Shown here: positions 28,139 to 46,604 of the stretch, one piece after another | How positions within the stretch are numbered: position 1 is the stretch's first letter | Layout of the letters: every line of letters starts with the position of its first letter | IMG/VR virus record: IMGVR_UViG_3300042350_004528 | Span: 234,834-298,833 of that record | Reading direction: 5' to 3' (one strand) | Length of the DNA: 64,000 nucleotides | Notes under the pieces: generated by a model | The model's database searches: none | What the model was told of the DNA's origin: nothing | The model's input: the letters and a program-made list of their open reading frames with translations, nothing else | Program-made: the position numbers and the translations under genes

Positions 28139-28209
28139 AGCTGGTAGTTGGAATCGAACCAATCTCTATAAGTTTTGCAGACTTATTGCACTCCATGTAC
28201 ATTACCAGC
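28139..28209 (-). tRNA. tRNA-Cys(GCA)
   Basis: TAAGT-CTGCAAA-ACTTA, U73. Confidence 0.85.
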
Positions 28210-28216
28210 ATATTAG

Positions 28217-28287
28217 CACGGGTGGAAGGATTCGAACCTCCATCGCTGGTTTTGGAGACCAGCATTCTACCATTGAAATACACCCGT
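28217..28287 (-). tRNA. tRNA-Trp(CCA)
   Basis: CTGGT-CTCCAAA-ACCAG. Confidence 0.9.
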
Positions 28288-28293
28288 ATATTG

Positions 28294-28363
28294 TGGACAC
28301 AGTGGGAATCGAACCCAAACGATCTCCTTGCAAGGGAGTCGACCTGCCTTCGGTATCTGGCCC
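28294..28363 (-). tRNA. tRNA-Ala(TGC), atypical
   Basis: CTCC-CTTGCAA-GGAG, G3:U70 kept, irregular acceptor and D arm. Confidence 0.7.
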
Positions 28364-28366
28364 ATA

Positions 28367-28453
28367 TGGCGGAGAGCGGAGTACTCGAAACTCATACCCG
28401 AAAGTACCACTCGCTTAGCAGGCGGTGACAGCACCCTGGCTGTGTCACTCTCC
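28367..28453 (-). tRNA. tRNA-Ser(GCT), atypical, CCA encoded
   Basis: CGC-CTGCTAA-GCG, long variable arm, G73, 5-bp D-stem. Confidence 0.75.
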
Positions 28454-28458
28454 ATTTG

Positions 28459-28534
28459 TCGGGAAAGCTGGATTCGAACCAGCGATCTCTCGCGTCCAAG
28501 GCGAGCGAGGATGACCTGACTCCTCCATTTCCCG
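28459..28534 (-). tRNA. tRNA-Pro(TGG)
   Basis: CTCGC-CTTGGAC-GCGAG, C1-G72, A73. Confidence 0.9.
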
Positions 28535-28539
28535 TTTTG

Positions 28540-28612
28540 TAGGGTAGACAGGGTTCGAACCTGCGACCCCGTGCTCCCAAAGCACGTGCGCTACCAACTG
28601 CGCTACTACCCT
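28540..28612 (-). tRNA. tRNA-Pro(TGG), second copy
   Basis: CGTGC-TTTGGGA-GCACG, A1-U72. Confidence 0.9.
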
Positions 28613-28619
28613 ATGTTTG

Positions 28620-28705
28620 TCGGAGTGGAGGGATTCGAACCCCCTGAGTTTCCAATGTGCCAGATTTACAGTCTGGTGCCCATCCGCCGTCTGAGCAGCA
28701 CTCCG
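28620..28705 (-). tRNA. tRNA-Tyr(GTA)
   Basis: CCAGA-CTGTAAA-TCTGG, long variable arm, C1-G72. Confidence 0.9.
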
Positions 28706-28720
28706 AAATGATATAAAACA

Positions 28721-28752
28721 AAAAACCCTGAGATTTTGTCCCAGGGCTTCTA
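28721..28752 (-). terminator. Intrinsic terminator of attenuator A
   Basis: CCCTGGGA-CAAAA-TCTCAGGG followed by a U tract; its 5' arm (TAGAAGCCCTG) is complementary to 28801-28811 in the leader ORF. Confidence 0.85.
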
Positions 28753-28785
28753 CTATTTTATATAATTAGTTTCCAAAAAAAATCG

Positions 28786-28884
28786 TTAACTAAAAGACAA
28801 TAGAAGCCCTGTTCCAGCTGGATATGCTGGAGCTGCTGGACAACTATACGGCCATGCCACGATATTTTTGTTCAAATTTTTCAT
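28786..28884 (-). CDS. Leader peptide A (32 aa) MKNLNKNIVAWPYSCPAAPAYPAGTGLLLSFS
   Basis: Hand translated; codons 10-23 are all Ala/Trp/Pro/Tyr/Ser(AGT)/Cys, the species in the downstream array. Confidence 0.8.
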   Translation of the reverse strand: MKNLNKNIVAWPYSCPAAPAYPAGTGLLLSFS

Positions 28885-28985
28885 TTTGTCTTTATAAATA
28901 GTGTGTTCTTTTAAAAAGTGATACAAATATAAGCACAGTTTTTTAAATAAGCAAGTTTTTTTAAAAATTAATCATAAATTTCTGT

Positions 28986-29029
28986 TATATCGGTCATGTG
29001 ATACAAATATATCGGTCATGTGATACAAA
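28986..29029. repeat. 22-bp tandem duplication
   Basis: TATATCGGTCATGTGATACAAA x2. Confidence 0.9.
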
Positions 29030-29051
29030 CCAGGCGCTTACCACTCACAAT

Positions 29052-29129
29052 TGGGGCGAACGATGAGGTTCGAACTCACGACCTCCTGAACCACAATCAG
29101 GCGCTCTAACCAACTGAGCTACGTCCGCC
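29052..29129 (-). tRNA. tRNA-His(GTG) with encoded G-1, C73 and CCA
   Basis: CCTGA-TTGTGGT-TCAGG. Confidence 0.92.
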
Positions 29130-29139
29130 ATGTAATCCC

Positions 29140-29982
29140 CTACCTGTTGGTGGGGATTAAGTTATTTAAATATTCTCTATTTTGAGTAAAGATTGGTGTT
29201 TCGACATCCAATTCCCAAGCGCTTCTGGTGTAAACATCCTTTGGATCAATCACAACCGTATCACGATTGACTTCCGCATTGGCACTTTTACGAACAAACG
29301 TCTTTTCAATTTTTCTGATTATACCACCACGTTTTTCTCTTGGTGAGTAATCATTCCAATTTGTACCAGCCTGAAATATCAATTCTTGCATACCATCGGT
29401 CTTAACCCCATGTAATTGTTTTGGTGAGTATAAACTCTGAGCGACCGATGAAATTGAATTTCTGGTCGCATCTTGTTGTCTCCAGATGAAATAATTCTCA
29501 ACCTCAACTTTTTGTGGGATTTGAAATACCCTGGCATCAAACATAGCCAATTTAGGTTCGCTGGCGTATCTTTTATCCGTCACAGACTTTCTCTCGATAA
29601 CATGTAGATTCTTAATATAACGATCCATTCTCAATTTATTAAAGATGGCTGTTGCCATTGAGGCTGAAACGCTCGCCATTTTCTGTAAGTTATTATCGAA
29701 CCAAGCTTGTGTGCCCTCATCTTCAAAATCGGTGATCAAAATTGAAATCTCATCTGATTGCACATACGCAAACTTAGCACCCATAATGTTTTTACATAGA
29801 TATGCCGCTGTCTCATCCATATCATCAATCAAATCCAAATCAAATGGCCTTCTCAAACCTTTTGTATAGGTGTGAAAAGCCTTACCATCAATTCTGATAA
29901 TGGTGTAACCTCTTCTTGGTAATGAAATACGAGTTCTATCCTCATAGTTCGATTTCATTCTGTCTCCTAATGCGTCTTTCAT
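29140..29982 (-). CDS. thg1: Thg1-like tRNA(His) guanylyltransferase / 3'-5' polymerase
   Basis: RIDGKAFHTYT, YVQSDEIS, FDARVF, WRQQDATRNSIS. Confidence 0.92.
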   Translation of the reverse strand: MKDALGDRMKSNYEDRTRISLPRRGYTIIRIDGKAFHTYTKGLRRPFDLDLIDDMDETAAYLCKNIMGAKFAYVQSDEISILITDFEDEGTQAWFDNNLQKMASVSASMATAIFNKLRMDRYIKNLHVIERKSVTDKRYASEPKLAMFDARVFQIPQKVEVENYFIWRQQDATRNSISSVAQSLYSPKQLHGVKTDGMQELIFQAGTNWNDYSPREKRGGIIRKIEKTFVRKSANAEVNRDTVVIDPKDVYTRSAWELDVETPIFTQNREYLNNLIPTNR

Positions 29983-30413
29983 TTTATTTCTTGGTTAATT
30001 TTATATTCTTCTTCTGTTGCTATTCTAATTGGTACGAACAGCGCATACCCATCATCATCCTCAAAATGGTTACAATCGTCTTCATAAGTCATATTAAACT
30101 TAGTTCGATTGTAGATGAACTTGTTTTGTTTGACATCCCATTTTGCTATGGTGGCTCTCCTATGATCACCCGCATAAAACTGACCGTCAACCAAATTTTT
30201 TTTCTGAATAGCCCCAGCGCCAATTAATTTTGGTACATAAAAGTTATTCCACTCATCAGTTTCAACTCGTGGTAATTCGGGTATATCATTAACACCAGCG
30301 AATGGTTTTAATGTCTCCCAATATTCACGAATACGTTGTTCCCTTTCAGCTTTTTCAATTTCTCGTTTAGCTTTCAGTTCAGCGAATATCATATCTTTAT
30401 CAATCTGTTCCAT
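29979..30413 (-). CDS. Hypothetical protein
   Basis: 144-aa ORF. Confidence 0.6.
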
Positions 30414-30427
30414 AACAAATCATTTTG

Positions 30428-30512
30428 CGGAGAGGGAGGGATTCGAACCCCCGTTACCTTTCGGTAAAACGGTTTTCAAGACCGCCGCGATCAACCGCTC
30501 TGCCACCTCTCC
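30428..30512 (-). tRNA. tRNA-Ser(TGA)
   Basis: GCGGT-CTTGAAA-ACCGT, long variable arm, G73. Confidence 0.92.
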
Positions 30513-30561
30513 AATATTTCACAAATATAAGAATAAAAATGTTAATTAACAAGTTTATTTT

Positions 30562-30638
30562 TGGTAGGCATGGTAGGACTCGAACCTACGACCTTCTGCG
30601 TATCAGACAGACGCTCTAACCAACTGAGCTACATGCCT
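30562..30638 (-). tRNA. tRNA-Ile(GAT), CCA encoded
   Basis: TCTGT-CTGATAC-GCAGA. Confidence 0.92.
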
Positions 30639-30645
30639 ATATTTG

Positions 30646-30719
30646 TACACCCTGATGGATTCGAACCACCGACCCCCTGCATGTAAGGCAGGTGCTCTAA
30701 CCAACTGAGCTAAGGATGC
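30646..30719 (-). tRNA. tRNA-Val(TAC)
   Basis: CCTGC-CTTACAT-GCAGG. Confidence 0.92.
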
Positions 30720-30725
30720 AAATTG

Positions 30726-30799
30726 TGACCCCATCGGGACTCGAACCCGAAACCTTCGCATTAAAAGTGCGAAGCTCTAACCAATTGAGCTACGAGGTC
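30726..30799 (-). tRNA. tRNA-Lys(TTT)
   Basis: TCGCA-CTTTTAA-TGCGA. Confidence 0.92.
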
Positions 30800-30808
30800 A
30801 TATAAAAC

Positions 30809-30837
30809 AAAAAACCCAGGTGGTTTACCTGGGTTTT
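30809..30837 (-). terminator. Intrinsic terminator of attenuator B
   Basis: AAAACCCAGGT-AAACC-ACCTGGGTTTT + U tract; AACCCAG is complementary to CTGGGTT in leader B (30885-30891). Confidence 0.85.
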
Positions 30838-30862
30838 CTTTTCTAACTCTATGTTCTTTAGT

Positions 30863-30949
30863 TTAACATAAATTAGGCAATACTAACCCAGCCCAGTTTT
30901 TCACCGAGATATGTTTAATTGACTTAATAATGTTAACCATTGTGTTCAT
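30863..30949 (-). CDS. Leader peptide B (28 aa) MNTMVNIIKSIKHISVKNWAGLVLPNLC
   Basis: Codons 5-17 dominated by Val/Ile/Lys/Ser(TCN)/His, matching downstream tRNAs. Confidence 0.75.
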   Translation of the reverse strand: MNTMVNIIKSIKHISVKNWAGLVLPNLC

Positions 30950-31022
30950 TTTACTGATTTTTAAATATATAGTGCAAAAGTAAGCAAAGTTTTTTAAATA
31001 TGCAAGTTTTTTCAAAAAAAAA

Positions 31023-31884: not shown

Positions 31885-33537
31885 TTATAAACTGTAAATT
31901 CCAAAAGGCGTAATTAAATAATCAATGATTTTATTTTTTAAATGAGTCATAGCTTCTTCGGGACGATTTACTATTGGCTCGTTATGAACATTAAATGAAG
32001 TATTTACCAAACAACCAAAACCTGTTTGATTTTTATAAGATTTCAAAATATGATAAAATAATGGATTTGAATTTTTAGTTACAATTTGAATACGTGCCGT
32101 TTTGTCCACAGGATGGACAACAGTTGGTAACTTATCTTTCCATTCATCTCGTGTTTCAAAACATAATGTCATAAACTCAGCGGCATATCTAGATTTATTC
32201 ACTATAAACAATCGATTAGCATCCTCATCTATTACTGCTGGCGCAAAAGGCATAAAATCGTTACGTTGTAACTTATCATTAATTAATTTATAAGTTTCGG
32301 GGTGAGTGGCGTCACAAATAATACTTCTATTACCTAAAGCTCTAGGGCCGTGTTCAAATTTGCCCTGAAATAATCCTAATATTTTTTTATTAAGTAATAA
32401 AACAGTAATAAAATCTATATTAAAAGGAATATAATTATATGTTCCTAAAATATTTTTTGCCGCTTCATCTACGTGTTCTTTATCATACTCATTCCCAAAA
32501 AACACATTATTTAATCTAAAAGGTTTAAAATCAGGATGAAGTTGTTTAATCGTTCCTAAAACACACCCTAAAGCTAACCCCTCATCACCCATTGGGGGGG
32601 CTATAAATACTTCATCCACCCATTCTAGTTCATTAATTAATTTATTCATTTTTACATTAGCAAAAATACCTCCAGCCATTGCCACTTTTTTAACATGAGG
32701 ATATTTTTGATGTAAATTATTAAGTATTTTTAAGATTTTTTCCTCAAATACTTTCTGTCCAGTATAAGCAATGTTTTTAATAGTTTCATGATTCTTCCAA
32801 TATCGAGAACCCATTGATTTAAAAAAGTTTTGATAAGTTTTTAAAAAAACATTTCCCCCAGCTAAATCACTATCATCAGAAAAAGGTGAAATTTCTGTTT
32901 GAAGACCATCAATTTTAATAACTTCGTTAAAAGCATCATATATTTCAGGTATTAGTCCTCCATGCCCAGCCATACCCACTACTTTACCTTCATCTTTTAA
33001 TCTTTTAAATCCTATTAATTCTGTAATAGCGGCATAAAATAGTCCTAAAGAATCTCTATTTAATAAAATCCCATCGATATACTCTAAATTACCATTTTTA
33101 CCTAAATAATACTTAGCTGAATGATTTTCTCCTGAACCATCAATAGCCACAACTAATGTATCTTCTTGAAAGTTAGATAAGTAATATGCTGTATTAATAT
33201 GAGAATCGTGGTGTTCGATTTTAATATATTTTTCTTTTTCTAAATTAAAATTAATGGTCATTTTAAAAATATCTCTGATTATTTCGTAATCGTAAAAACT
33301 AGTGAAATAATTTACTTTTCCTAAATCTACATCATGTTTAACTATTAATTCAGTAAGAGAAGCTAAAGGATATCTAAAATAATTATTTTCAAAATCTTTA
33401 TAAGGTTTAATCCTATTTAATCTTTCTTCCTCTAAGACTACTTTTAAATCGCCATTTTCAAAATAAGCTAACCCACAGCTGTGAGAACCACCAATAATTC
33501 CTAATATTCGATAGGAAGAATTTTCGTACAATTTCAT
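31885..33537 (-). CDS. Carbamoyltransferase (NodU/CmcH family)
   Basis: EEERLNRIK, EHHDSH, DGSGE, EGKVVGMAG, GGIFANVK, GDEGLALG, EHGPRALGNRSI, FMPFAP, NTSFNVHNEPIV. Confidence 0.92.
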   Translation of the reverse strand: MKLYENSSYRILGIIGGSHSCGLAYFENGDLKVVLEEERLNRIKPYKDFENNYFRYPLASLTELIVKHDVDLGKVNYFTSFYDYEIIRDIFKMTINFNLEKEKYIKIEHHDSHINTAYYLSNFQEDTLVVAIDGSGENHSAKYYLGKNGNLEYIDGILLNRDSLGLFYAAITELIGFKRLKDEGKVVGMAGHGGLIPEIYDAFNEVIKIDGLQTEISPFSDDSDLAGGNVFLKTYQNFFKSMGSRYWKNHETIKNIAYTGQKVFEEKILKILNNLHQKYPHVKKVAMAGGIFANVKMNKLINELEWVDEVFIAPPMGDEGLALGCVLGTIKQLHPDFKPFRLNNVFFGNEYDKEHVDEAAKNILGTYNYIPFNIDFITVLLLNKKILGLFQGKFEHGPRALGNRSIICDATHPETYKLINDKLQRNDFMPFAPAVIDEDANRLFIVNKSRYAAEFMTLCFETRDEWKDKLPTVVHPVDKTARIQIVTKNSNPLFYHILKSYKNQTGFGCLVNTSFNVHNEPIVNRPEEAMTHLKNKIIDYLITPFGIYSL

Positions 33538-33539
33538 AA

Positions 33540-34220
33540 TTAATCTAATTCTTTTATAATTTCTTTTTTATTAAAATCATATTTCCACCAAGAATTTTCA
33601 CCAGGTGTAGAAATGTATGACACATGAGTCATGTGCGCTTTTTTTACACACATTTGTTTATATTTATTTTGGTTTGTAATTCTGTTAGACCATTGAGCGT
33701 CAGTTGACGCGAGATATTGGGTGATGCCTTGAATATCGTTAGCGGCAATAGTGTGATAAGGGTGTTCTAACCAAATGTGTCTCCTAATTCCAGTAAAAAA
33801 CCAACCAGTAAACGACACTTCAAATTCATCTGGTAGGGCATCCATTTCATATGTTTTAAAAAATTTATTATATTTTTCCATCAAAGGAAGTTGCCCTCCC
33901 TGACAATGTATCCATTGTTTGCCTTGAGAATGAATTGTTGCTAAATAACTATTTTGCCTAACACACGACCACCCTGTAACTATTTCGTGTCTATGTAACG
34001 CTTCTTCTAAATAGGCAAAATTTTCAGGACTAATAATAACATCATCAGAAACAATAAAATAATTATCATAATTTGTTTCTTCAATGAAGGAAGGAATATG
34101 TGTATTGAGTTCATATTCCCTAAACCCCTTAAACCAAACTTTAGGGACTTTTAATTTTGAGATGGCGTGTTTTATGATTTCTTCATCTCTAACACTCATT
34201 ATCATTAAACAATTTTTCAT
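33540..34220 (-). CDS. Putative glycosyltransferase (GT-A-like)
   Basis: SDD motif, position in the sugar island. Confidence 0.5.
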   Translation of the reverse strand: MKNCLMIMSVRDEEIIKHAISKLKVPKVWFKGFREYELNTHIPSFIEETNYDNYFIVSDDVIISPENFAYLEEALHRHEIVTGWSCVRQNSYLATIHSQGKQWIHCQGGQLPLMEKYNKFFKTYEMDALPDEFEVSFTGWFFTGIRRHIWLEHPYHTIAANDIQGITQYLASTDAQWSNRITNQNKYKQMCVKKAHMTHVSYISTPGENSWWKYDFNKKEIIKELD

Positions 34221-34900
34221 AATTTATTCGAAAAAAATCCTAAAATATCTTCAATAATTTCTAAAGAATTTTTATTAACAATTCCATCTGGGTTATAAAA
34301 ATAATCGGGAACGCTCTCCGTACCAAATTTTCCCACATTATACCCAGCATAAAATTGATTGAAATCACTACCCCAAGGTAAATAAGCTGTAACCCAATCA
34401 TATTTTTTTGTTTCGTGCAGATAACCATTAATGATAGAAATGTTACAATTATGTTCTTTTCTAAATCTATCTATTACGCACATCCAAACGTGAAGCTCTT
34501 CTGGGTTTTCACTGTGTAACGTAAAATTAACTAATTTATATCTTAAATCTAGCTTGTCTTCAAGTAAGATCTCTCTAGTATGTGGATTAAGAATTTTAAC
34601 CTCATAAGGGACAAATCCTTTATAAAACCACCTTAAATACGAATGATTTGGTATATTGGCGGCTTCCCAAAGAATTTTAAAATCTTCTGAATTTATTATT
34701 TCCTCTTCAATTGACTTTGAACCTGAGGCGTTGTAATTGTACTTTAATTTTTTTACAACTTTGGTTTTTTCAATAGATATTTCTACACGAAATTCATTAA
34801 GTTTATTATCATCATCGTGTACATGAACACATAAACCATCTCGGTAATCTACCATAAATCTATAATTCATATTTTTGTTTTTAAAATTTATTTTATCCAA
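34217..34900 (-). CDS. Hypothetical protein (sugar island)
   Basis: 227-aa ORF. Confidence 0.55.
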   Translation of the reverse strand: MDKINFKNKNMNYRFMVDYRDGLCVHVHDDDNKLNEFRVEISIEKTKVVKKLKYNYNASGSKSIEEEIINSEDFKILWEAANIPNHSYLRWFYKGFVPYEVKILNPHTREILLEDKLDLRYKLVNFTLHSENPEELHVWMCVIDRFRKEHNCNISIINGYLHETKKYDWVTAYLPWGSDFNQFYAGYNVGKFGTESVPDYFYNPDGIVNKNSLEIIEDILGFFSNKL

Positions 34901-35618
34901 AGCAACTCATTGTGCTATAATTTTTCATTTCAAATATATAATTAACCCTAATATCCGAAGGATCCATTTCAATAGTCCTGTTCGTATTACAAGCCATGGC
35001 AATAGCGGACGTTGCTGTTAAATTACCTAAAAAATGGTCACAAGAAGCTATTGCTGTTGTCATATCTTTTAATAAAGGTAAATATAGCATAGGTATTTTA
35101 TTAAAAAAAGGAGAAGTTGTATATTGTTCGATATATGAACAAACAAAGTAAGCTTTATCTTTCCAATATTCAATGTAATTTAAATAATATTGAATAGTAT
35201 CTAAATGCGGTAAAGGTTTAAAATTTCTATTTATTAATAATAAGTCTTTGAATGCGCTGTCTTTTTTAACCTCTAACCAAGAATAATTAAAAGGTATTTC
35301 AATGTTTGGGTTAATATAATTGCGGAGGTACAATTCATTCCACGATGCTGTGAACAAATTTGGGTCGGTTCTAAATCTGGTGAGATCAATATCTATTTCT
35401 TGGTTCGCCCAAATTTCAAAGTTATTAACATAAGATTGATTTGATACTATGGGGGATAATTCATTAAAACTATTTTCTACCCCCGAAGCAAATACTTCAT
35501 GGTCGTGATTACAAATATATATGTTAAATTTTTCCCCTGTGGTTTCAAAAAGATATTTGGGTAAAATTAAAGCGTGAATAAAATCACCTAGTTTTCCACC
35601 AATTAATATATTTCTCAT
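34893..35618 (-). CDS. Putative GT9/heptosyltransferase-like protein
   Basis: GGKLGDFIH, IASCDHFLGNLT. Confidence 0.55.
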   Translation of the reverse strand: MRNILIGGKLGDFIHALILPKYLFETTGEKFNIYICNHDHEVFASGVENSFNELSPIVSNQSYVNNFEIWANQEIDIDLTRFRTDPNLFTASWNELYLRNYINPNIEIPFNYSWLEVKKDSAFKDLLLINRNFKPLPHLDTIQYYLNYIEYWKDKAYFVCSYIEQYTTSPFFNKIPMLYLPLLKDMTTAIASCDHFLGNLTATSAIAMACNTNRTIEMDPSDIRVNYIFEMKNYSTMSCFG

Positions 35619-35869
35619 TTTTTACCGTACATTTTAGTTGCACCTTGTTTATATAATTTTTGTTGTTTTCCAGTTGCCACCATTTCATTAATACTTTCAT
35701 CAATTTCTTGTATTAAATCTGTTCGATATGTGTTAGCAACATTTGTAACTCGAGTAGCATCTGCTATTTGTTTATCGGAGGCATTGGGATCACGTTTAAT
35801 GTCTTCGGCCATCCAAATACGAATATTAGCTATTGTAAGTTTGTCAATTAAATTTCCTATTGTTTCCAT
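35615..35869 (-). CDS. Small helical protein (DUF4254-like)
   Basis: TIGNLIDKLTI...R...IQEID. Confidence 0.6.
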   Translation of the reverse strand: METIGNLIDKLTIANIRIWMAEDIKRDPNASDKQIADATRVTNVANTYRTDLIQEIDESINEMVATGKQQKLYKQGATKMYGKK

Positions 35870-35872
35870 AGT

Positions 35873-38701: not shown

Positions 38702-38776
38702 GCGACAATAGTAATAAAAAATGTGGATAAAACAAATAAAAAAAGGGTAAAATATTTTACCCTTTTTAAATTTCTG

Positions 38777-39152
38777 TGGAGTCGGAGGGATTCGAACCCT
38801 CGTCTCGTTTAGCCATTCAATAATTCTCATTCACATGCTTAGTTCATTTTTCTAAACAAACAAAATATTTGTCTTCACTAACCCAGAAGTTCAATAAAAC
38901 TGGAATACCTTTTTTGGAGTTCCCACCTCCCACCTGGCATCTAAGGGTTTTTGCAGTTTTAACTGACAGTTGTTGGCTTACGCCAATTCGTAGTCTGCAA
39001 ACTCAACTGGCTGACCGTTCAACACGATGTTGCCTTCAGCGTCAATGTAGCTTTCGCCATCTGAAATTGTGTATAGGTTATTTAAGTGTTTCCGATACTA
39101 ACACCACATGCAAATTAAAGAACGAATCTACCGATCGATTCCAGTCGACCCC
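38777..39152 (-). ncRNA. ssrA: tmRNA; tag ORF 39058-38978 = GESYIDAEGNIVLNGQPVEFADYELA*
   Basis: 5' GGGGTCGACTGGAATCGA; 3' T-arm GAGGGTTCGAATCCCTC + CGACTCCA with G3:U70. Confidence 0.92.
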
Positions 39153-39183
39153 ATATGTATAAATACCGTAATATTTTACTTTG

Positions 39184-39267
39184 TACCGAGGATGGGAGTC
39201 GAACCCACACGGCCTTTTGGGCCAAGGGATTTTAAGTCCCTCATGTCTACCATTCCATCACCTCGGC
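39184..39267 (-). tRNA. tRNA-Leu(TAA)
   Basis: AGGGA-CTTAAAA-TCCCT, long variable arm. Confidence 0.92.
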
Positions 39268-39928: not shown

Positions 39929-39999
39929 TTGTCGGGGGTGGATTCGAACCACCGTAAACTCCTTCAAAGGGAGTTGTCCTGCCGCTAGACGACCCGACA
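39929..39999 (-). tRNA. tRNA-Gln(TTG)
   Basis: ACTCC-CTTTGAA-GGAGT, U1-A72. Confidence 0.9.
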
Positions 40000-40005
40000 A
40001 TTTAG

Positions 40006-40091
40006 TACCTGGAGAGGGATTCGAACCCTCACGCCCCTTTCAGAGCACTGGATTTTAAGTCCAGCGTGACTACCAGTTCCACCATCCAGGC
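40006..40091 (-). tRNA. tRNA-Leu(TAA)
   Basis: CTGGA-CTTAAAA-TCCAG. Confidence 0.92.
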
Positions 40092-40096
40092 ATTTG

Positions 40097-40177
40097 TACC
40101 CTCGGTCGGATTCGAACCGACACGCCTCGCGACACTGGTTTCTAAGACCAGCGGGTCTACCGTTCCCCCACGAGGGC
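40097..40177 (-). tRNA. tRNA-Leu(TAG)
   Basis: CTGGT-CTTAGAA-ACCAG. Confidence 0.92.
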
Positions 40178-40182
40178 ATTTG

Positions 40183-40255
40183 TGGCTTTAACAGGATTCG
40201 AACCCATACTTTATCGTCCGTAGCGATAAGTGCTATCCAGTTACACCATAAAGCC
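40183..40255 (-). tRNA. tRNA-Arg(ACG)
   Basis: TATCG-CTACGGA-CGATA. Confidence 0.9.
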
Positions 40256-40262: not shown

Positions 40263-40295
40263 AAAAAACCCTGAGTTGCTTAGCACCCCAGGGTT
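40263..40295 (-). terminator. Intrinsic terminator of attenuator C
   Basis: AACCCTGGG...CTCAGGGTT + U tract immediately upstream of tRNA-Arg. Confidence 0.8.
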
Positions 40296-40320: not shown

Positions 40321-40401
40321 TTACATATGAACATAGCTTACCCCAGGCTCTTTTGTCAAGAGTTGTAATTGTAACTGGCGTTGTAAGCTTAGTGTTCTCA
40401 T
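40321..40401 (-). CDS. Leader peptide C (26 aa) MRTLSLQRQLQLQLLTKEPGVSYVHM
   Basis: 11 of codons 4-15 are Leu/Gln/Arg(CGC), matching downstream Leu(TAA,TAG), Gln, Arg(ACG). Confidence 0.8.
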   Translation of the reverse strand: MRTLSLQRQLQLQLLTKEPGVSYVHM

Positions 40402-40442
40402 GTCTATATAAATATGTTCGTTTTTAAAAAAGTGCAACTATC

Positions 40443-40524
40443 GGACTAACCTTTACAAACTTTCCGAAGAAAGCTTTTGGGGTTGAACCAAATTTAACCA
40501 GAGTTAGTTGCTGAATTTAGTCCC
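40443..40524 (-). ncRNA. Stem + TTCAGCAA motif small RNA candidate
   Basis: GGACTAA/TTAGTCC closing stem, TTCAGCAA after the 5' arm, starts just after a TAnnTTTG promoter. Confidence 0.55.
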
Positions 40525-40580
40525 AATTGCGATACAAAGATAAGAAATGTTTTTTTAATAAACAAGTATTTTTGAAAATT

Positions 40581-42257: not shown

Positions 42258-42324
42258 ATTTTTAGTGATTTTTTTTAATTAAAAATTATAAAACCCCCAA
42301 GCTATTAACCTGGGGGTTTTGAAC

Positions 42325-42742: not shown

Positions 42743-42816
42743 TTGGCGGGATGGGACTTGAACCCATGACCTTGACCTTATAAGAGTCCTGCGCTAACCA
42801 ACTGCGCCACCCGCCA
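42743..42816 (-). tRNA. tRNA-Ile(TAT)
   Basis: GGACT-CTTATAA-GGTCA, A73. Confidence 0.85.
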
Positions 42817-42823
42817 GTCGAAT

Positions 42824-42898
42824 TGGAGCGGTAAGACAGAATCGAACTGTCGTCCTCAGCTTGGAAGGCTGATGTAATAGCCACTATACGACTACCGC
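42824..42898 (-). tRNA. tRNA-Gly(TCC), CCA encoded
   Basis: TCAGC-CTTCCAA-GCTGA, U73. Confidence 0.92.
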
Positions 42899-43175
42899 AA
42901 GATGCCTCATTCTGGGGTTTGATTGAGGTCTAGTTACATCGGTTTCTTTCGCTGTTTCAAGAACCTGCCGCACTTCTGCTGGTAAAACCCGTCAACACTA
43001 CTCGGCGGAGATGTGTCGCTCTCCGTTACTCCGACCCCCAGCATTTTAACTATAAAGGCTCATTACCACCCTATGAGCGGATGATTGCTCTCCAGTACAG
43101 TTTTCGGTTACCATCTGGGTATTAACCGTGATCCTTTAGTGAGATCCAAACACTCTGAGTACCCCTTACTCGTTG

Positions 43176-43248
43176 AGCGGTAGACAGGATTCGAACCTGC
43201 GACCCTCACCTTGGCAAGGTGATGCTCTACCAACTGAGCTACTACCGC
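43176..43248 (-). tRNA. tRNA-Gly(GCC)
   Basis: TCACC-TTGCCAA-GGTGA. Confidence 0.92.
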
Positions 43249-43362
43249 TTAAAAGACAGCCCACAACGTCCACATTATACCGTTGGTGGGGAATGACGAC
43301 CAGTCAAGTTGTGGTTCTTACTTTATGTCGCCTGCAACAGGTGCCACCCACTTCTGTCTTAG

Positions 43363-43452
43363 CACTCGACATGGGAATCGAACCCACCACCCTTAGCGCA
43401 CCACTGTTATGGTGATTCGAACACCGCTACTAAGGGCTGACCCCAATCGAGT
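43363..43452 (-). ncRNA. tRNA-like RNA with two T-loop hairpins and no D arm or anticodon
   Basis: ACTCGAT/GTCGAGT acceptor; GGTG-TTCGAAT-CACC and GTGGG-TTCGATT-CCCAT. Confidence 0.6.
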
Positions 43453-43665
43453 AAGTTGGGGAACCTATTTACAAGCTTTTGGTTCCCCGATTGATCAAGT
43501 TATTTAATTATTTTAACCTCAAATAAGGCATTCACATCGCCAATAAAGGGGATCGGCTTTAAGGTTTAACCGCCATAACTCTCAGATACGCTCGTCATGT
43601 GACTCTTTCTCCGTTTATTTTAAGATGCACGGATCCCTCTCTGATGGGAGTACAAAACATCTGCT

Positions 43666-43743
43666 TGGTTGCGGGAACGGGATTCGAACCCGTGTAATTC
43701 GGCTTATGAGACCGAGCTGGAACCAACTCCAGTCCACCCCGCA
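43666..43743 (-). tRNA. tRNA-Met(CAT), atypical, CCA encoded
   Basis: TCGGT-CTCATAA-GCCGA; fMet-like 5' end, extended D-stem. Confidence 0.85.
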
Positions 43744-44285
43744 GTAATGAAAGGCTCTGAATCGTCCCTGCGCCATTCTCAGGAGAGCCTTTCGGTTTTA
43801 AATAGATTCGGCGATCGATTATTCCCACTGATATACCTAAGATTCGTTAGATCATAGTAACCATCCACAATGGGCCTATACTCTTACACTCCGTCCGTAT
43901 TTACTCACCTAATCAAATGCGTCATAGGTATTTCAGATACAGCGTTCAGTGCTACCCTCAGGACTTCTTCACCCTACCCCCATAGTTACGTGGCAGATCT
44001 CGCTCGGAAGAAAAGAGCGTGTATCGTAGAATTGTCCAGTATTTCTACGACTTGTGGATTACAACACGACCAATTAAGGCCCCTTACCCTCTCAATCCAT
44101 AATGAGGGACTCGGTCATACTCGTTCCCAACGTATCCGACTGAACTTCCCCATGTCGGTAAACCCCGTTTATTAGAGGTTATACGAATTTCACTTCTTGT
44201 GTGACCTTCCCCATAGCCTTGGAGCCTTCTAGCCAGGTTCACACACCATAACGGATGAGTACGTCCGTTAATCGTGGGGTCTTTT

Positions 44286-44377
44286 GCTGATTAAAGGGAA
44301 TTGAACCCAATCCTCCAGCCCTGTCCACTTCTATCCTGAAGCAACTAGGGCCAGTGTGCCCATTACACTATAACCAA
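44286..44377 (-). ncRNA. tRNA-like RNA with a 24-nt insert replacing the anticodon loop
   Basis: TTGGTTA/TAATCAG acceptor, GTGT/ACAC D-stem, GGCCCT/AGGGCT stem, GGG-TTCAATT-CCC T-arm. Confidence 0.6.
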
Positions 44378-44426
44378 TCGAGAGTTTCGAACCTCTCAGA
44401 CTCAAGTTAATTACTCTTGAGTTTTG

Positions 44427-44498
44427 TAGCGGGGGTGGGAATCGAACCCACGACCTCCAGGTTATGAGCCTGGCGAGCTACCTCTGCTCTACCCCGCA
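44427..44498 (-). tRNA. tRNA-fMet(CAT)
   Basis: U1xU72 mismatch, A11-U24, CCAGG-CTCATAA-CCTGG. Confidence 0.88.
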
Positions 44499-44504
44499 AT
44501 GTTG

Positions 44505-44576
44505 TACTCCCTACGGGAATCGAACCCGTCTTTTCAGGATGAAAACCTGATGTCCTAACCGATAGACGAAAGGAGC
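44505..44576 (-). tRNA. tRNA-Glu(TTC)
   Basis: TCAGG-TTTTCAT-CCTGA. Confidence 0.92.
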
Positions 44577-44953
44577 GTAAATTGATGATTCGACCACATT
44601 TCTTACCAGAGCGGAACTAAGGGGTCTATTGGTACCGTACCCTCATGCACTCGATTGGGATTGCAGCCCCGTGAGTCTCCCGATGCGCCAGATTGTCTTT
44701 CCTATACTTTCGCTAACCTATCTGTTATTGGGTTCTGGCAGTGTCCCAGTTAGCATACTCCCATAGTACTTTTTCCTCATCAATTCTTTTTTTTTGCCTT
44801 TACCTTTCAAAGACTAAGTAGGTTTAGTTGCGGACTTTCACGTCTTATGCGTCCATAAGACTCCTTCCTCTGAGTGCTTCTCTTTTTACAGTCTTTAAAC
44901 TATCAAGGTACGTTATCTCAGTTTTCAACACAAAACCACTGTGTTAGCAATCG

Positions 44954-45027
44954 CGATCCCGATAGGATTCGAACCTATGACCTACTGCTTAGAAGGCAGT
45001 TGCTCTATCCAGCTGAGCTACGGGATC
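44954..45027 (-). tRNA. tRNA-Arg(TCT)
   Basis: ACTGC-CTTCTAA-GCAGT. Confidence 0.92.
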
Positions 45028-45036
45028 GTAAATTTC

Positions 45037-45098
45037 GGGTTGATCTTTTTAGTCGGATTTACAAGTCTGATTTTTTAAGATTTGCTGAACTCAACCCC
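45037..45098 (-). ncRNA. Stem + TTCAGCAA motif small RNA candidate
   Basis: GGGTTGA/TCAACCC closing stem, TTCAGCAAA, internal CAGACTTGTAAATCC resembling the Tyr anticodon arm with one extra nt. Confidence 0.55.
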
Positions 45099-45116
45099 AA
45101 TAAGTAAATAAAACAC

Positions 45117-45235
45117 AGGATGCGTTTATACGTGCTCTAACCAACTGAGCTATCGACCTCATACGAAGCCGAGTGGGACTCGAACCCACGACCCCGAGGT
45201 TGACATCCTAAAGTTTAATTTGCGGAATGCATCCT
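45117..45235 (-). ncRNA. Circularly permuted tRNA-like RNA (YrlA/Y-RNA-like)
   Basis: AGGATGC/GCATCCT terminal stem + TTCCGCAAA; T-arm precedes D-arm; acceptor stem closed by a GTAT loop. Confidence 0.75.
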
Positions 45236-45249
45236 CTTTGTTTTATTTG

Positions 45250-45321
45250 CGGTCTATGCGGGAATCGAACCCGCCTCACCGCCGTGACAGGGCGGCATCC
45301 TAGCCGATGAACGAATAGACC
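45250..45321 (-). tRNA. tRNA-Asp(GTC)
   Basis: CCGCC-CTGTCAC-GGCGG, G73. Confidence 0.92.
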
Positions 45322-45327
45322 GTTTAG

Positions 45328-45449
45328 AGCCCAGAGCTGGATTCGAACCAGCGCCTTTTTTTTCCATAAAAAATTGTTAGATAGTGATTTGCTGAAATCA
45401 TCCACACTGGATGACTCTTTTTTTAATGCTACCGCTACACCATCTGGGC
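45328..45449 (-). ncRNA. tRNA-like RNA with anticodon arm replaced by a hairpin + TTCAGCAA module
   Basis: GCCCAGA/TCTGGGC acceptor, D-loop-like segment, TCATCCA-GTG-TGGATGA hairpin + TTTCAGCAAA, GCTGG-TTCGAAT-CCAGC. Confidence 0.7.
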
Positions 45450-45453
45450 TTTG

Positions 45454-45527
45454 CTCCCCCGTCAGGGCTCGAACCTGAGACCTACTGATTAACAGTCAGT
45501 TGCTCTAACCAGCTGAGCTACAGAGGA
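45454..45527 (-). tRNA. tRNA-Asn(GTT)
   Basis: ACTGA-CTGTTAA-TCAGT. Confidence 0.92.
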
Positions 45528-45710
45528 ATATTTGATGGTGTCACAACTATATACCATCAGCTACGGAACCCTTCTGTTAATAAGTAAGTAGGAGATTTAA
45601 AAATCTCGTCCGTATCAAATCCACGCCATTGGTTACGTTGTCTCACGACAAGAGGCTTTACCAAGGCAAAGTTTTAATTTTTTCACCAATATGTCAAAGA
45701 ACAATCTTTG

Positions 45711-45783
45711 AGCCACATGACGGGATCGAACCGCCGACCTACTGATTACAAATCAGTTGCTCTACCAGCTGAGCTAATGTGGC
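45711..45783 (-). tRNA. tRNA-Thr(TGT)
   Basis: ACTGA-TTTGTAA-TCAGT. Confidence 0.92.
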
Positions 45784-45788
45784 ATCTG

Positions 45789-45861
45789 TGGTGCGGGGAG
45801 GAATCGAACCTCCGACACAGGGATTTTCAGTCCCTTGCTCTACCAACTGAGCTACCGCACC
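45789..45861 (-). tRNA. tRNA-Phe(GAA)
   Basis: AGGGA-CTGAAAA-TCCCT. Confidence 0.92.
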
Positions 45862-46001
45862 AAGTAAAGATAATGGTTGGATTCCCGTTACACCCAACTC
45901 TGTACTGCTTCTTGAGTTTTACAAGCGCTTGGCAGAGGGAGCTGATTTCTTCGGCCCAAACTCGCTTGTCGACAGCTTATTTGGAGAAACCCATTATCTT
46001 C

Positions 46002-46100
46002 GTAGCGTATGTGGGATTCGAACCTAAACCAACTATTCATGCTTCGTTGGCCACCTGTACACGGGCTCATGACTGCGCCGTGCTCTCCAAGAGTACGCTA
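46002..46100 (-). ncRNA. tRNA-like RNA (acceptor + T-loop, non-canonical core)
   Basis: TAGCGTA/TACGCTA acceptor, GG-TTCGAAT-CC T-loop, internal TCATG/CATGA stem; no 7-nt anticodon loop found. Confidence 0.5.
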
Positions 46101-46334
46101 TGTATTTTAAAAGTTACAATTCATCGGAATGTGTTTGTTTTCCATTAAAAGTAGAGTTTGTATTATTTGCCGAATACATTCCCGAATTGTGGTACAAAAG
46201 TAAGAACAAAATTTTTAACCTGCAAATACTTTTGAAACTTTTTTCATTTTTTTTCAAAGAACTTATTTTAACGCTTGCTCTCGCAATTGTGGTACAAATG
46301 TAAGAACGAAACTTCAAACTCGCAAACTTTCAAC

Positions 46335-46369
46335 AAAAAAAAACCCGAACTTTTGGTTCGGGCTTTCTA
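46335..46369 (-). terminator. Intrinsic terminator of attenuator D
   Basis: GCCCGAAC-CAAAA-GTTCGGGT + long U tract; TAGAAAGCCCG is perfectly complementary to 46401-46411 in leader D. Confidence 0.88.
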
Positions 46370-46391
46370 CTATGGTTTACACAATGAATAA

Positions 46392-46469
46392 TTACACCAA
46401 TAGAAAGCCCGTAGATGAGTCCTCGCCTCTTCCAAAGAATCTATTCGTTGTATTTATCACTCTTTTCAT
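46392..46469 (-). CDS. Leader peptide D (25 aa) MKRVINTTNRFFGRGEDSSTGFLLV
   Basis: 14 of codons 3-17 are read by tRNAs in the 42743-45861 array. Confidence 0.8.
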   Translation of the reverse strand: MKRVINTTNRFFGRGEDSSTGFLLV

Positions 46470-46604
46470 TGAATGTTTTATAAGTTTTGTATAAATATAG
46501 GTAACTTTATAAAAAAGTCAAGTTTTTGAAAAAAAATATTTTTATCTACGATAAATACTTTATTATTGGTTGATATAACTTATATTTAAGTTATATTTTT
46601 TTTA

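What the first reader, a model, noticed from the sequence alone, without database searches (positions are those of the whole stretch)
28139..46500. Four codon-matched leader-peptide attenuators gate a complete 20-amino-acid phage tRNA set (candidate tRNA-depletion sensor)
Seen: every multi-tRNA array (28139-28705, 30428-30799, 39929-40255, 42743-45861) is preceded on the same strand by promoter-like motif -> 25-32 codon ORF -> intrinsic terminator. Each ORF has a 12-15 codon block whose codons match the anticodons of its own array (A 14/14; B 11/13, or 12/13 counting the downstream His tRNA; C 11/12; D 14/15), down to isoacceptor (AGT vs TCN Ser, CGC vs AGA Arg, ATA Ile, GGA+GGC). In A, B and D the ORF 3' part pairs with the terminator 5' arm. 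Together the four units cover all 20 amino acids. Established: this is the geometry of trp/his-type ribosome-mediated attenuation, and host defences such as PrrC, PARIS/AriB and some retrons cleave tRNAs. Inference: stalling on depleted or cleaved tRNAs frees the antiterminator and induces exactly the replacement tRNAs. I know of no description of this in phages, but could not search the literature.
Basis: partly seen in the sequence, partly recalled or inferred. Interest (0 to 1): 0.97.

Follow-up and report, generated by a model that had tools for sequence, protein, structure and literature searches.

The report
Codon-matched leader attenuators before phage tRNA arrays
Each tRNA gene cluster of this large phage sits behind a tiny reading frame, written in the codons those same tRNAs read, plus a stop-transcription hairpin, so the phage probably makes more of a tRNA set only when decoding of its codons slows; the same unreported device occurs in cultured Cellulophaga phages.

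Summary
On the minus strand, four units of promoter, 25-32 codon ORF and intrinsic terminator precede tRNA arrays A-D.

- **Codon match.** The best 12-codon window of each ORF matches its own array at 12, 10, 11 and 12 codons, against 4 or fewer for any other array. Random repartition of the tRNAs never reached this (0 of 100,000).
- **Alternative pairing.** In all four units, C included, the 3' part of the ORF pairs with the terminator's 5' arm (-24.5, -11.7, -14.5 and -22.4 kcal/mol).
- **Other phages.** Leaders picked by structure alone track their own arrays (0 of 200,000 permutations). Examples include cultured Cellulophaga phages phi40:1, phi38:1 and phi4:1, where the leaders are unannotated or buried in "hypothetical proteins".
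- **Best explanation.** This is ribosome-mediated transcription attenuation used as negative feedback on tRNA supply.

Caveats:
- Unit D has two strong promoters between its terminator and its array.
- Array B has an internal promoter.
- tRNA-Ala and tRNA-Ser(GCT) are degenerate.
- Only C has a 1:2-type hairpin.
- The anticodon-nuclease trigger is untested.

Ten literature searches and Rfam gave no precedent. I rate it a new variant of a known mechanism, of high interest, and testable in culture.

The parts
28924..28954 (-). Promoter of unit A (TTG-N20-TAtaTTTG, Bacteroidota -33/-7 type)
   Evidence: Motif scan: 23 such motifs on the minus strand against 3.4 expected. Sequence checked.
28786..28884 (-). 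Leader ORF A, 32 codons (MKNLNKNIVAWPYSCPAAPAYPAGTGLLLSFS). Codons 10-23 are the block read by array A.
   Evidence: The ORF is 100% conserved in the ~97% identical relative L151.
28796..28812 (-). Antiterminator 5' strand of unit A, inside the ORF 3' part. It pairs with 28741-28756.
   Evidence: -24.5 kcal/mol, z -5.3 against shuffles. Co-transcriptional folds.
28716..28756 (-). Antiterminator 3' strand plus intrinsic terminator A (13-bp stem, T-run), ending 11 nt before tRNA-Tyr
28139..28705 (-). Array A: Tyr-GTA, Pro-TGG x2, degenerate Ser-GCT (28367-28453), degenerate Ala-TGC (28293-28362), Trp-CCA, Cys-GCA
30975..31005 (-). Promoter of unit B
30863..30949 (-). Leader ORF B, 28 codons (MNTMVNIIKSIKHISVKNWAGLVLPNLC). 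The block is codons 5-17. Its antiterminator 5' strand is 30884-30892.
   Evidence: In L151 the block changes are TCA>TCG and CAT>CAC, each still read by the same tRNA.
30804..30839 (-). Terminator B. Its 5' arm at 30828-30836 is the antiterminator partner.
   Evidence: (-11.7 kcal/mol, z -3.0)
29052..30799 (-). Unit B body: Lys-TTT, Val-TAC, Ile-GAT, internal promoter at 30522-30552, Ser-TGA, a 144-aa ORF, a Thg1-like tRNA-His guanylyltransferase (29140-29982) and tRNA-His-GTG (29052-29128)
40535..40565 (-). Promoter of unit C, followed by a ~110-nt structured spacer (40402-40532) that ends in a T-run
   Evidence: The spacer's fold z-score is only -1.25 and it is unexplained.
40321..40401 (-). 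Leader ORF C, 26 codons (MRTLSLQRQLQLQLLTKEPGVSYVHM). The block is codons 4-15. Its antiterminator 5' strand is 40339-40350. The block also pairs with this strand, giving a 1:2-type hairpin.
40263..40295 (-). Terminator C (5' arm partner at 40284-40295), 7 nt before tRNA-Arg
   Evidence: (antiterminator -14.5 kcal/mol, z -2.2)
39929..40255 (-). Array C: Arg-ACG, Leu-TAG, Leu-TAA, Gln-TTG
46492..46521 (-). Promoter of unit D (TTGACT-N-TAtaTTTA). A near-identical promoter precedes the homologous leader in L133.
46392..46469 (-). Leader ORF D, 25 codons (MKRVINTTNRFFGRGEDSSTGFLLV). The block is codons 3-17. Its antiterminator 5' strand is 46397-46412.
   Evidence: -22.4 kcal/mol, z -6.2
46332..46372 (-). 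Antiterminator 3' strand plus terminator D
46195..46325 (-). Two further strong promoter motifs (46295-46325 and 46195-46225), downstream of terminator D and upstream of array D
   Evidence: They make attenuator D at most a partial control.
42743..45861 (-). Array D: Phe, Thr-TGT, Asn, Asp, Arg-TCT, Glu, Met x2, Gly-GCC, Gly-TCC, Ile-TAT. GC-rich spacers separate the tRNAs and a YrlA-like RNA lies at 45099-45221. The unit ends at a terminator at 42290-42320.

Best explanation
Each unit is a ribosome-mediated (leader-peptide) transcription attenuator whose output is the tRNA genes that decode the leader.

Proposed sequence of events:
1. Host-type RNA polymerase starts at a Bacteroidota-type promoter and transcribes a 25-32 codon ORF.
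2. If aminoacyl-tRNAs for the block codons are plentiful, the ribosome runs through the ORF's last ~9 codons. This occludes the 5' strand of the antiterminator, so the downstream GC hairpin plus U-run forms and transcription stops just before the first tRNA.
3. If any tRNA species of the block is scarce (depleted, cleaved or uncharged), the ribosome stalls inside the block. The ORF 3' segment stays free and pairs with the terminator's 5' arm as soon as that arm is made. The terminator cannot form and the array is transcribed.

Because the products relieve the stall, each unit is a closed negative-feedback loop, a homeostat for a subset of isoacceptors. It works with OR logic over all species in the array.

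Shown here: the anatomy, the codon statistics, the alternative pairings, and the co-variation of leader codons and pairing strands with arrays and terminators across phages.

Inferred: that the leaders are translated, the kinetic coupling, the direction of regulation, and the physiological trigger.
For: Within the window:
- Diagonal-only codon match, 12/10/11/12 against 4 or fewer, p < 1e-5.
- Every tRNA species of each array except Met in D has a cognate codon in its leader: 6/6, 4/4, 4/4 and 9/10.
- Box choice follows the array's isoacceptor: AGT against TCA/TCG for Ser, CGC against AGA for Arg, ATT/ATC against ATA for Ile. Across phages 42 of 55 such codons fit, against 30.5 expected, z 3.7.
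- The match is frame-specific over 16 leaders from the window and its relatives.
- Terminators are confirmed.
- Folding the transcript up to the terminator loop gives the antiterminator in A-D. This holds as long as the ribosome mask sits in the early or middle part of the block.

Across phages:
- Antiterminator energy against shuffles has a median z of -3 over 19 leaders.
- Own terminator arm against other arms averages -14.4 against -8.5 kcal/mol.
- Structure-only selected sORFs match their own arrays at 333 of 734 codons, against 216 +/- 18 when permuted, 0 of 200,000.
- Coverage of own array species is 155 of 181, against 117 +/- 7 when permuted.

Independent designs:
- The S-I-H-T leaders of L062, L074 and L084.
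- L103, with 21 of 21 block codons matched.
- L116, a 47-codon leader matched 100% to a 23-tRNA array.
- L133, homologous to unit D. It lacks Phe and Asn both in its array and in its leader, and has Ala in both.
- Cellulophaga phage phi40:1, three units including one 16/16 block. phi38:1 is 99.9% identical over this region.
- Cellulophaga phage phi4:1, with block QRLHLQELEQP before Pro Glu Gln His Leu Leu Arg.
Against: - No expression, ribosome-profiling or 3'-end data were available.
- Full-length MFE folds always prefer the terminator, so the model depends on co-transcriptional kinetics.
- With a simple footprint at the stop codon, part of the antiterminator strand of A and B remains free.
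- A, B and D lack a 1:2 hairpin.
- Unit D has two promoters after its attenuator, and array B has an internal one.
- Transcription-translation coupling in Bacteroidota is not established here.
- Two crAss-like phages and three Proteobacteria phages with large arrays show no such leaders, so the device is not general to phage tRNA arrays.
Confidence: 0.75

Rival explanations
1. The anatomy is the same, but the physiological role is a dedicated counter-defence alarm. Host anticodon nucleases or other tRNA-cleaving defences deplete specific isoacceptors, and the matching unit is then induced to replace them.
For: The window is rich in RNA-repair and tRNA-maintenance genes:
- RNA ligase (13268-14650).
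- An RlaP-family protein (19823-20917).
- A CCA-adding enzyme fused to a HAD RNA-repair domain (23979-26063).
- A Thg1-like enzyme.
- tmRNA and a Y-RNA-like RNA.

Splitting the tRNAs into several separately sensed units suits isoacceptor-specific damage.
Against: - Nothing in the sequence distinguishes nuclease damage from general host tRNA decay, codon-usage mismatch or loss of charging.
- The 72-kb Cellulophaga phages carry the device, but no repair-gene set was examined there.
- Newly made phage tRNAs would also be cleaved unless they are resistant, and that was not analysed.
Confidence: 0.3
2. The units act as a temporal or translation-capacity switch rather than as tRNA-specific feedback. 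Read-through is the default, and termination simply reports that translation is running well (early infection). The codon match then only ensures that the phage's own tRNAs do not distort the read-out.
For: A, B and D fold into the antiterminator when no ribosome is present. Extra constitutive-looking promoters lie inside units B and D.
Against: A general capacity sensor would not need array-specific codon sets, isoacceptor-level codon choice or near-complete coverage of each array's species. It would also not need co-variation across phages.
Confidence: 0.12
3. The logic is opposite or the mechanism is different. Stalling could uncouple the ribosome from the polymerase and promote termination or decay (Rho or RNase), giving positive feedback. 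Alternatively, the terminated leader transcripts or peptides could act in trans.
For: A stall at the last two or three block codons would cover the antiterminator strand. Trans-acting attenuator RNAs and leader peptides are known elsewhere, for example rnTrpL and peTrpL in Sinorhizobium (PMC6614838 and PMC7298713, listed).
Against: - The antiterminator strand lies downstream of the block, and the pairing strands co-vary with the terminator arm. That is what the classical direction predicts.
- The peptides keep their composition but not their order within a family. SIHTISITSSH, SIHTTSIISST and SIHTISISTSSS are examples. This argues against a peptide function.
- The leaders are AT-rich and short, so they are poor Rho substrates.
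Confidence: 0.06
4. The match is chance or an annotation artefact. The sORFs are untranslated, and the hairpins merely terminate upstream genes or insulate the arrays.
For: The ORFs are short. Two tRNAs needed for the 14/14 count in A are sub-threshold.
Against: - p < 1e-5 within the window and p < 5e-6 across phages.
- A promoter lies between each upstream gene and its leader.
- The match is frame-specific.
- The device recurs in three unrelated Bacteroidota phage lineages.
Confidence: 0.02

Closest known systems
Leader-peptide attenuators of amino-acid biosynthetic operons (trp, his, leu, thr, pheA; the multi-amino-acid ilvGMEDA and thr leaders)
   Same: - A short promoter-proximal ORF with a cluster of regulatory codons.
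- An intrinsic terminator.
- A mutually exclusive antiterminator whose 5' strand lies just downstream of the regulatory codons.
- Blocks covering several amino acids, as in the ilv and thr leaders.
- Unit C also has a 1:2-type hairpin.
   Different: - The regulated genes are tRNAs, not enzymes.
- The block encodes up to 19 different amino acids, one or more codons per tRNA species in the array, rather than a run of one to three amino acids.
- Codon choice follows isoacceptors.
- A, B and D lack the 1:2 hairpin.
- The host is a phage of Bacteroidota.
- There is no sequence-family membership: the best Rfam matches are Phe_leader at E 0.27 and Thr_leader at E 0.07, far below the gathering scores.
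pheST (phenylalanyl-tRNA synthetase) attenuator of E. coli (from my own knowledge)
   Same: Ribosome-mediated attenuation applied to a gene of the translation apparatus, so that decoding capacity feeds back on its own supply.
   Different: It controls an aminoacyl-tRNA synthetase for one amino acid. It does not control the tRNA genes themselves, and it is not in a virus.
T-box riboswitches
   Same: Both sense tRNA status, use a terminator/antiterminator choice, and regulate genes that restore decoding capacity.
   Different: A T-box binds one uncharged tRNA directly through a specifier codon and the T-box sequence, without a ribosome. Here there is an ORF with many codons and no T-box match in Rfam.
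Phage tRNA sets as compensation for host tRNA loss or anticodon nucleases (T4 and T5 type counter-defence; from my own knowledge)
   Same: The same cargo (large tRNA sets plus RNA-repair enzymes) and the same presumed purpose of sustaining translation during infection.
   Different: I found no description of a sensing or feedback element upstream of the arrays in those systems. The three Proteobacteria phages examined, two of them T5-like (family Demerecviridae), showed none.

Membership tests
Ribosome-mediated (leader-peptide) transcription attenuator, as a mechanistic class | A short ORF with start and stop codons between the promoter and the regulated genes | tested here: met
   There are four ORFs of 25-32 codons, each 22-133 nt downstream of a promoter motif. 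The ORFs are preserved in relatives.
Ribosome-mediated (leader-peptide) transcription attenuator, as a mechanistic class | A cluster of regulatory codons that corresponds to the regulated function | tested here: met
   Own-array match is 12/10/11/12 of 12 codons, against 4 or fewer for other arrays. 0 of 100,000 random partitions reach this, and across phages 0 of 200,000 permutations do.
Ribosome-mediated (leader-peptide) transcription attenuator, as a mechanistic class | An intrinsic terminator between the leader ORF and the regulated genes | tested here: met
   A, B and D are found by the consensus scan. C is found by folding, -13 to -16 kcal/mol plus U6. In D the terminator is separated from the array by 482 nt that contain two promoters.
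Ribosome-mediated (leader-peptide) transcription attenuator, as a mechanistic class | An antiterminator helix that is mutually exclusive with the terminator and is freed by a ribosome stalled at the regulatory codons | tested here: met
   Energies are -24.5, -11.7, -14.5 and -22.4 kcal/mol, with z from -2.2 to -6.2. Own arms pair better than other arms, -14.4 against -8.5.
Ribosome-mediated (leader-peptide) transcription attenuator, as a mechanistic class | An anti-antiterminator or pause hairpin (1:2) that gives termination when the leader is not translated | tested here: inconclusive
   It is present in C, where the block pairs with the antiterminator strand. It is not seen in A, B or D, which default to the antiterminator.
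Ribosome-mediated (leader-peptide) transcription attenuator, as a mechanistic class | The leader is translated, and read-through rises when the cognate aminoacyl-tRNA is limiting | not testable with these tools
   This needs Ribo-seq, Term-seq or reporters.
Rfam leader families (Trp_leader, His_leader, Leu_leader, Thr_leader, Phe_leader) | A covariance-model score at or above the family's gathering threshold | tested here: not met
   There is no hit at gathering. The best sub-threshold hits are Phe_leader at 23.6 bits against 55 and Thr_leader at 26 bits against 55.
T-box riboswitch | A match to the T-box leader model (specifier loop and T-box sequence) | tested here: not met
   There is no T-box hit at gathering on the whole window or at E up to 1 on the leader regions of units A, C and D. 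Leader B was covered only by the gathering-threshold scan.

The most novel reading that the evidence does not exclude
Many phages of Bacteroidota, from 72-kb podoviruses to ~300-kb jumbo phages, run their tRNA genes as modular closed-loop homeostats. Each array carries a 'bar-code' leader that lists the codons of its own tRNAs, so the ribosome itself reports which isoacceptors are running short, including after attack by host tRNA-cleaving defences. Only the matching replacement set is then induced. This would be the first case of tRNA genes controlled by leader-peptide attenuation, and the first virus-encoded sensor of decoding capacity.
Probability: 0.6. Interest if true: 0.93.

Novelty: new variant of a known kind. 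Interest (0 to 1): 0.9.

Why it matters
- **A new output for a known mechanism.** I found no description of tRNA genes regulated by leader-peptide attenuation. How phages control their tRNA cargo, and why they carry it, are open questions.
- **What a confirmed sensor would show.** A codon-bar-coded sensor would mean that phages measure decoding capacity isoacceptor by isoacceptor and top it up on demand.
- **A bioinformatic read-out.** The leader composition says which tRNAs a phage treats as one functional set.
- **Possible link to defence.** It may connect tRNA cargo to tRNA-targeting host defences.
- **Synthetic biology.** The units are compact, programmable sensors of tRNA availability.
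- **Immediate testability.** The device is present in the cultured pairs Cellulophaga baltica with phi38:1 or phi40:1, and with phi4:1. Infection RNA-seq for phi38:1 already exists (PMC5335546).

Tried and rejected
- **Full-length MFE folds**, with and without ribosome masks. The terminator wins in nearly every state, so this is uninformative for a kinetic switch. I replaced it with folds truncated before the terminator's 3' arm.
- **Rfam**, at gathering and at E up to 1. No leader, T-box or other cis-regulatory family was found.
- **DNA similarity of the window's A/B region to 50,697 phage records.** Only generic tRNA and Thg1 matches came back, with no close cultured relative. The same held for the L116 and L103 leader regions.
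- **Thg1-anchored loci.** Most relatives have no tRNAs next to Thg1. A tRNA-Ile(UAU) DNA pattern was far more productive.
- **Negative cases.** crAss-like phages cr111_1 and cr116_1 and Vibrio phage Thalassa, Pantoea phage AAS21 and Stenotrophomonas phage Bhz51 have arrays without leaders, so the device is not universal.
- **L046 and L055**, tRNA-rich relatives, show no convincing leaders.
- **A 'permuted tRNA' in array D.** This idea was rejected in favour of a YrlA-like Y RNA.
- **The structured spacer between promoter C and leader C.** The fold is not significant, z -1.25.
- **Literature.** Ten full-text searches gave no precedent. The Holmfeldt 2013 Cellulophaga phage paper is not held. 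The phi38:1 RNA-seq paper mentions no leaders or attenuation.
- **Not done.** I did not scan bacterial genomes for host versions of the device.

Full report
**What is there**

The window belongs to a 298.8-kb IMG/VR contig with phage hallmarks. These include an endolysin-like protein, a CCA-adding enzyme fused to an RNA-repair HAD domain, a Thg1-like enzyme, an RNA ligase and an RlaP-family protein.

ARAGORN finds 27 tRNAs, and Rfam adds a tmRNA. All lie on the minus strand.

Array A also contains two degenerate tRNAs that standard thresholds miss:
- Ser-GCT at 28453-28367.
- Ala-TGC at 28362-28293. It scores 25.8 bits in Rfam against a cut-off of 29, and its acceptor stem lacks G3:U70.

**The leaders**

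Upstream of each array (at higher coordinates) there is an ATG-initiated ORF of 32, 28, 26 or 25 codons. It is followed 27-39 nt later by a GC-rich hairpin and a U-run.

In A, B and C the U-run starts only 13-20 nt before the first tRNA. Terminators A, B and D are among the four best minus-strand hits of the independent consensus scan. C has a longer loop, so that scan misses it, but it folds at -13 to -16 kcal/mol.

Each leader is preceded by a TTG-N17-21-TAnnTTT(G/A) motif. This motif occurs 23 times on the coding strand against 3.4 expected, whereas sigma-70-type sites are not enriched. From established knowledge it is the -33/-7 promoter type of Bacteroidota. The same motif stands in front of the leaders of most related loci and in crAss-like and Cellulophaga phages.

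**Is the codon match more than chance?**

Yes. I used wobble rules: G34 reads Y, U34 reads R or the whole four-fold box, C34 reads G, and A34 reads U/C/A.

| Test | Result |
|---|---|
| Best 12-codon window against own array | 12, 10, 11, 12 |
| Best 12-codon window against any other array | 4 or fewer |
| Rank among the window's 382 ATG sORFs of 20-45 codons | first or joint first for each leader |
| Random repartition of the 26 tRNAs, summed score | 18.8 +/- 3.6 against 45 observed (0 of 100,000) |
| Array tRNA species with a cognate codon in own leader | 6/6, 4/4, 4/4, 9/10 |
| In-frame match over 16 leaders (window plus relatives) | 337 of 501 codons, against 176 and 190 in the other frames |

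- AGT in leader A against TCA/TCG in B.
- CGC in C against AGA x3 in D.
- ATT/ATC in B against ATA in D.
- GGA plus GGC in D.

Across phages, 42 of 55 such codons fall in the box served by the array, against 30.5 expected from local synonymous usage (z 3.7). That is supportive, but the power is modest.

**Alternative RNA structures**

Full-length transcripts fold into the terminator in almost every state, which says little about a kinetic switch.

I therefore folded the transcript as it exists when the polymerase has made the 5' arm and the loop. In that state a long helix forms between the ORF's last ~9 codons (-28 to -3 nt from the stop codon) and the terminator's 5' arm.

| Unit | Antiterminator energy (kcal/mol) | z against shuffles |
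|---|---|---|
| A | -24.5 | -5.3 |
| B | -11.7 | -3.0 |
| C | -14.5 (with two G-U pairs) | -2.2 |
| D | -22.4 | -6.2 |

So unit C has the pairing too. The helix persists when a footprint is placed on early or middle block codons, and it is lost when the footprint covers the ORF 3' end.

Only C shows a block-to-antiterminator (1:2) hairpin. A, B and D default to the antiterminator when untranslated. With a simple footprint at the stop codon, part of the A and B strand is still exposed, so the timing of ribosome and polymerase matters.

**Related phages**

I collected 229 loci: 147 from IMG/VR (anchored on Thg1 and on a tRNA-Ile(UAU) pattern) and 80 from metagenomes, of which two are crAss-like phage records. 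I then selected sORFs by structure alone. The criteria were an ATG ORF of 16-50 codons that ends no more than 80 nt before a hairpin plus T-run, which in turn lies no more than 60 nt before a tRNA.

For the 25 non-identical candidates:
- Own-array matches total 333 of 734 codons, against 216 +/- 18 after permuting arrays (0 of 200,000).
- Coverage of own array species is 155 of 181, against 117 +/- 7.

Distinct designs:
- S-I-H-T leaders before Ser/His/Thr/Ile arrays (L062, L067, L074, L084).
- I-S-T-F-C-G-N leaders (L097, L111, L122, L138).
- L103, with 21 consecutive matched codons before a 12-tRNA array.
- L116 and L130, where a 47-codon leader matches a 23-tRNA array at 100%.
- L120, L143 and L144.
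- L161, an A-like W-A-S-P-Y leader before Tyr Pro Gln Ser.
- L133, a homologue of unit D with the same promoter. Its array has Ala but no Phe or Asn, and its leader likewise.

Within a family, the composition of the block is kept while the order of residues changes. This is expected for selection on codons rather than on a peptide.

The ORF 3' segments change together with their terminator arms. Own arms average -14.4 kcal/mol against -8.5 for foreign arms, and the own arm usually ranks 1-3 of 16.

In the 96-97% identical relative L151, leader A is unchanged. The block changes in leader B are TCA>TCG and CAT>CAC, each still read by the same tRNA.

**Cultured phages**

Cellulophaga phage phi40:1 (KC821612.1, host Cellulophaga baltica) has three such units:
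- Leader at L230:3070-3147, inside the annotated gp066, before Lys Ile Gly Met Asp Thr Val Arg and Ile-TAT.
- Leader at L230:4530-4619, unannotated, with a 16/16 block before Tyr Ser Ser Asn Trp Phe Cys.
- Leader at L230:5772-5861, inside gp070, before Pro Glu Gln His Leu Arg.

The model phage phi38:1 is 99.9% identical over this region, and Calle_1 to Calle_3 are 96.4% identical.

The unrelated 146-kb phage phi4:1 has a leader with block Q R L H L Q E L E Q P before Pro Glu Gln His Leu Leu Arg. It also has a second unit whose start codon is not ATG.

By contrast, I found no leaders in two crAss-like phages or in three Proteobacteria phages with 20-27 tRNAs.

**How it most likely works**

Fast translation of the leader occludes the antiterminator strand and the terminator forms. 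A stall at any block codon leaves that strand free, the terminator is pre-empted, and the array is transcribed. Since the products decode the block, each unit is a negative-feedback loop on a subset of isoacceptors.

- Shown: the anatomy, the statistics, the alternative pairings and the co-variation.
- Inferred: translation of the leaders, the kinetics, the direction of control and the trigger.

The neighbouring RNA-repair genes make tRNA damage a plausible trigger, but the sequence cannot distinguish it from host tRNA decay or loss of charging.

**Limits**

- Two strong promoters (46295-46325 and 46195-46225) lie between terminator D and array D.
- An internal promoter (30522-30552) precedes tRNA-Ser(TGA), the Thg1-like gene and tRNA-His in unit B. 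The attenuators therefore modulate expression rather than gate it exclusively.
- Leader C is separated from its promoter by an unexplained ~110-nt element that ends in a T-run.
- The '20 amino acids' claim depends on a tRNA-Ala without the canonical identity pair.

**Comparison with what is known, and novelty**

Mechanistically this is leader-peptide attenuation. The closest known cases are the multi-amino-acid ilv and thr leaders, and pheST as a translation-apparatus target.

It is not a member of any Rfam leader family or of the T-box family.

Ten full-text searches found no description of leader-peptide control of tRNA genes, in phages or elsewhere. The phi38:1 transcriptome paper does not mention it. 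The searched library lacks most subscription journals, so absence of a precedent is not proven.

**Verdict**

The counter-defence trigger is untested. I rate the finding a new variant of a known mechanism, of high interest.

Noticed in passing
window 45099-45221 (-): A Y-RNA-like (YrlA) match at 45.9 bits, E 3e-8, below the gathering score of 69. Its tRNA-like domain looked at first like a circularly permuted tRNA inside array D. A DUF2828/DUF7788 protein is encoded at 62447-63847.
   Followed up: partly
window 38774-39152 (-): A phage-encoded tmRNA (78.8 bits) lies directly after a lone tRNA-Leu(TAA) at 39183-39267 and is followed by a terminator at 38740-38767.
   Followed up: no
window 13268-14650, 19823-20917, 23979-26063, 29140-29982: A set of RNA-repair and tRNA-maintenance genes: an RNA ligase, an RlaP-family nucleotidyltransferase, a CCA-adding enzyme fused to a 'Swiss-army-knife' HAD RNA-repair domain, and a Thg1-like tRNA-His guanylyltransferase placed just upstream of tRNA-His.
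   Followed up: partly
window 42899-43174, 43249-43665, 43744-44425, 44577-44952, 45862-46180 (-): Long spacers in array D have 43-46% GC against ~33% for the genome, have no Rfam match, and contain tRNA-like T-arm pieces. Their nature is unknown.
   Followed up: partly
window 28293-28453 (-): The two degenerate tRNAs of array A are Ser-GCT, and Ala-TGC with a C3.U70 mismatch instead of G3:U70. Leader A nevertheless contains six Ala codons and an AGT codon, which suggests these tRNAs are or were functional.
   Followed up: partly
window 40402-40532 (-): A ~110-nt element between promoter C and leader C has two interleaved long-range complementarities and a terminal T-run. The fold z-score is only -1.25 and no Rfam family matches.
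   Followed up: partly
window 28985-29045 (-): A tandem direct repeat of ~22 nt (TTTGTATCACATGACCGATATA) lies between tRNA-His and promoter A. It repeats the -7 box and start region of the phage promoters.
   Followed up: no
window, whole minus strand: There are 23 promoters of the type TTG-N17-21-TAnnTTTG with a shared A/T-rich spacer, against 3.4 expected. This points to a Bacteroidota host and use of the host RNA polymerase.
   Followed up: partly
L230 (Cellulophaga phage phi40:1, record positions 35281-35358, 36741-36830, 37983-38072) and L234 (phi4:1, L234:4597-4665): In published genomes the leaders are either unannotated or buried in 'hypothetical proteins' (gp066, gp070, gp075) whose annotated TTG starts lie inside the promoter. 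In several of them the ATG follows the -7 box by only 4 nt, so the mRNAs may be leaderless.
   Followed up: partly
window 31885-37721 and 46605-48415: Auxiliary metabolic genes lie between the arrays: a carbamoyltransferase, a C-methyltransferase, an AdoMet decarboxylase-like protein, an IMPDH/GMP-reductase-like protein, and a GDP-mannose 4,6-dehydratase with an epimerase. An LRR protein is encoded at 54508-56181.
   Followed up: no
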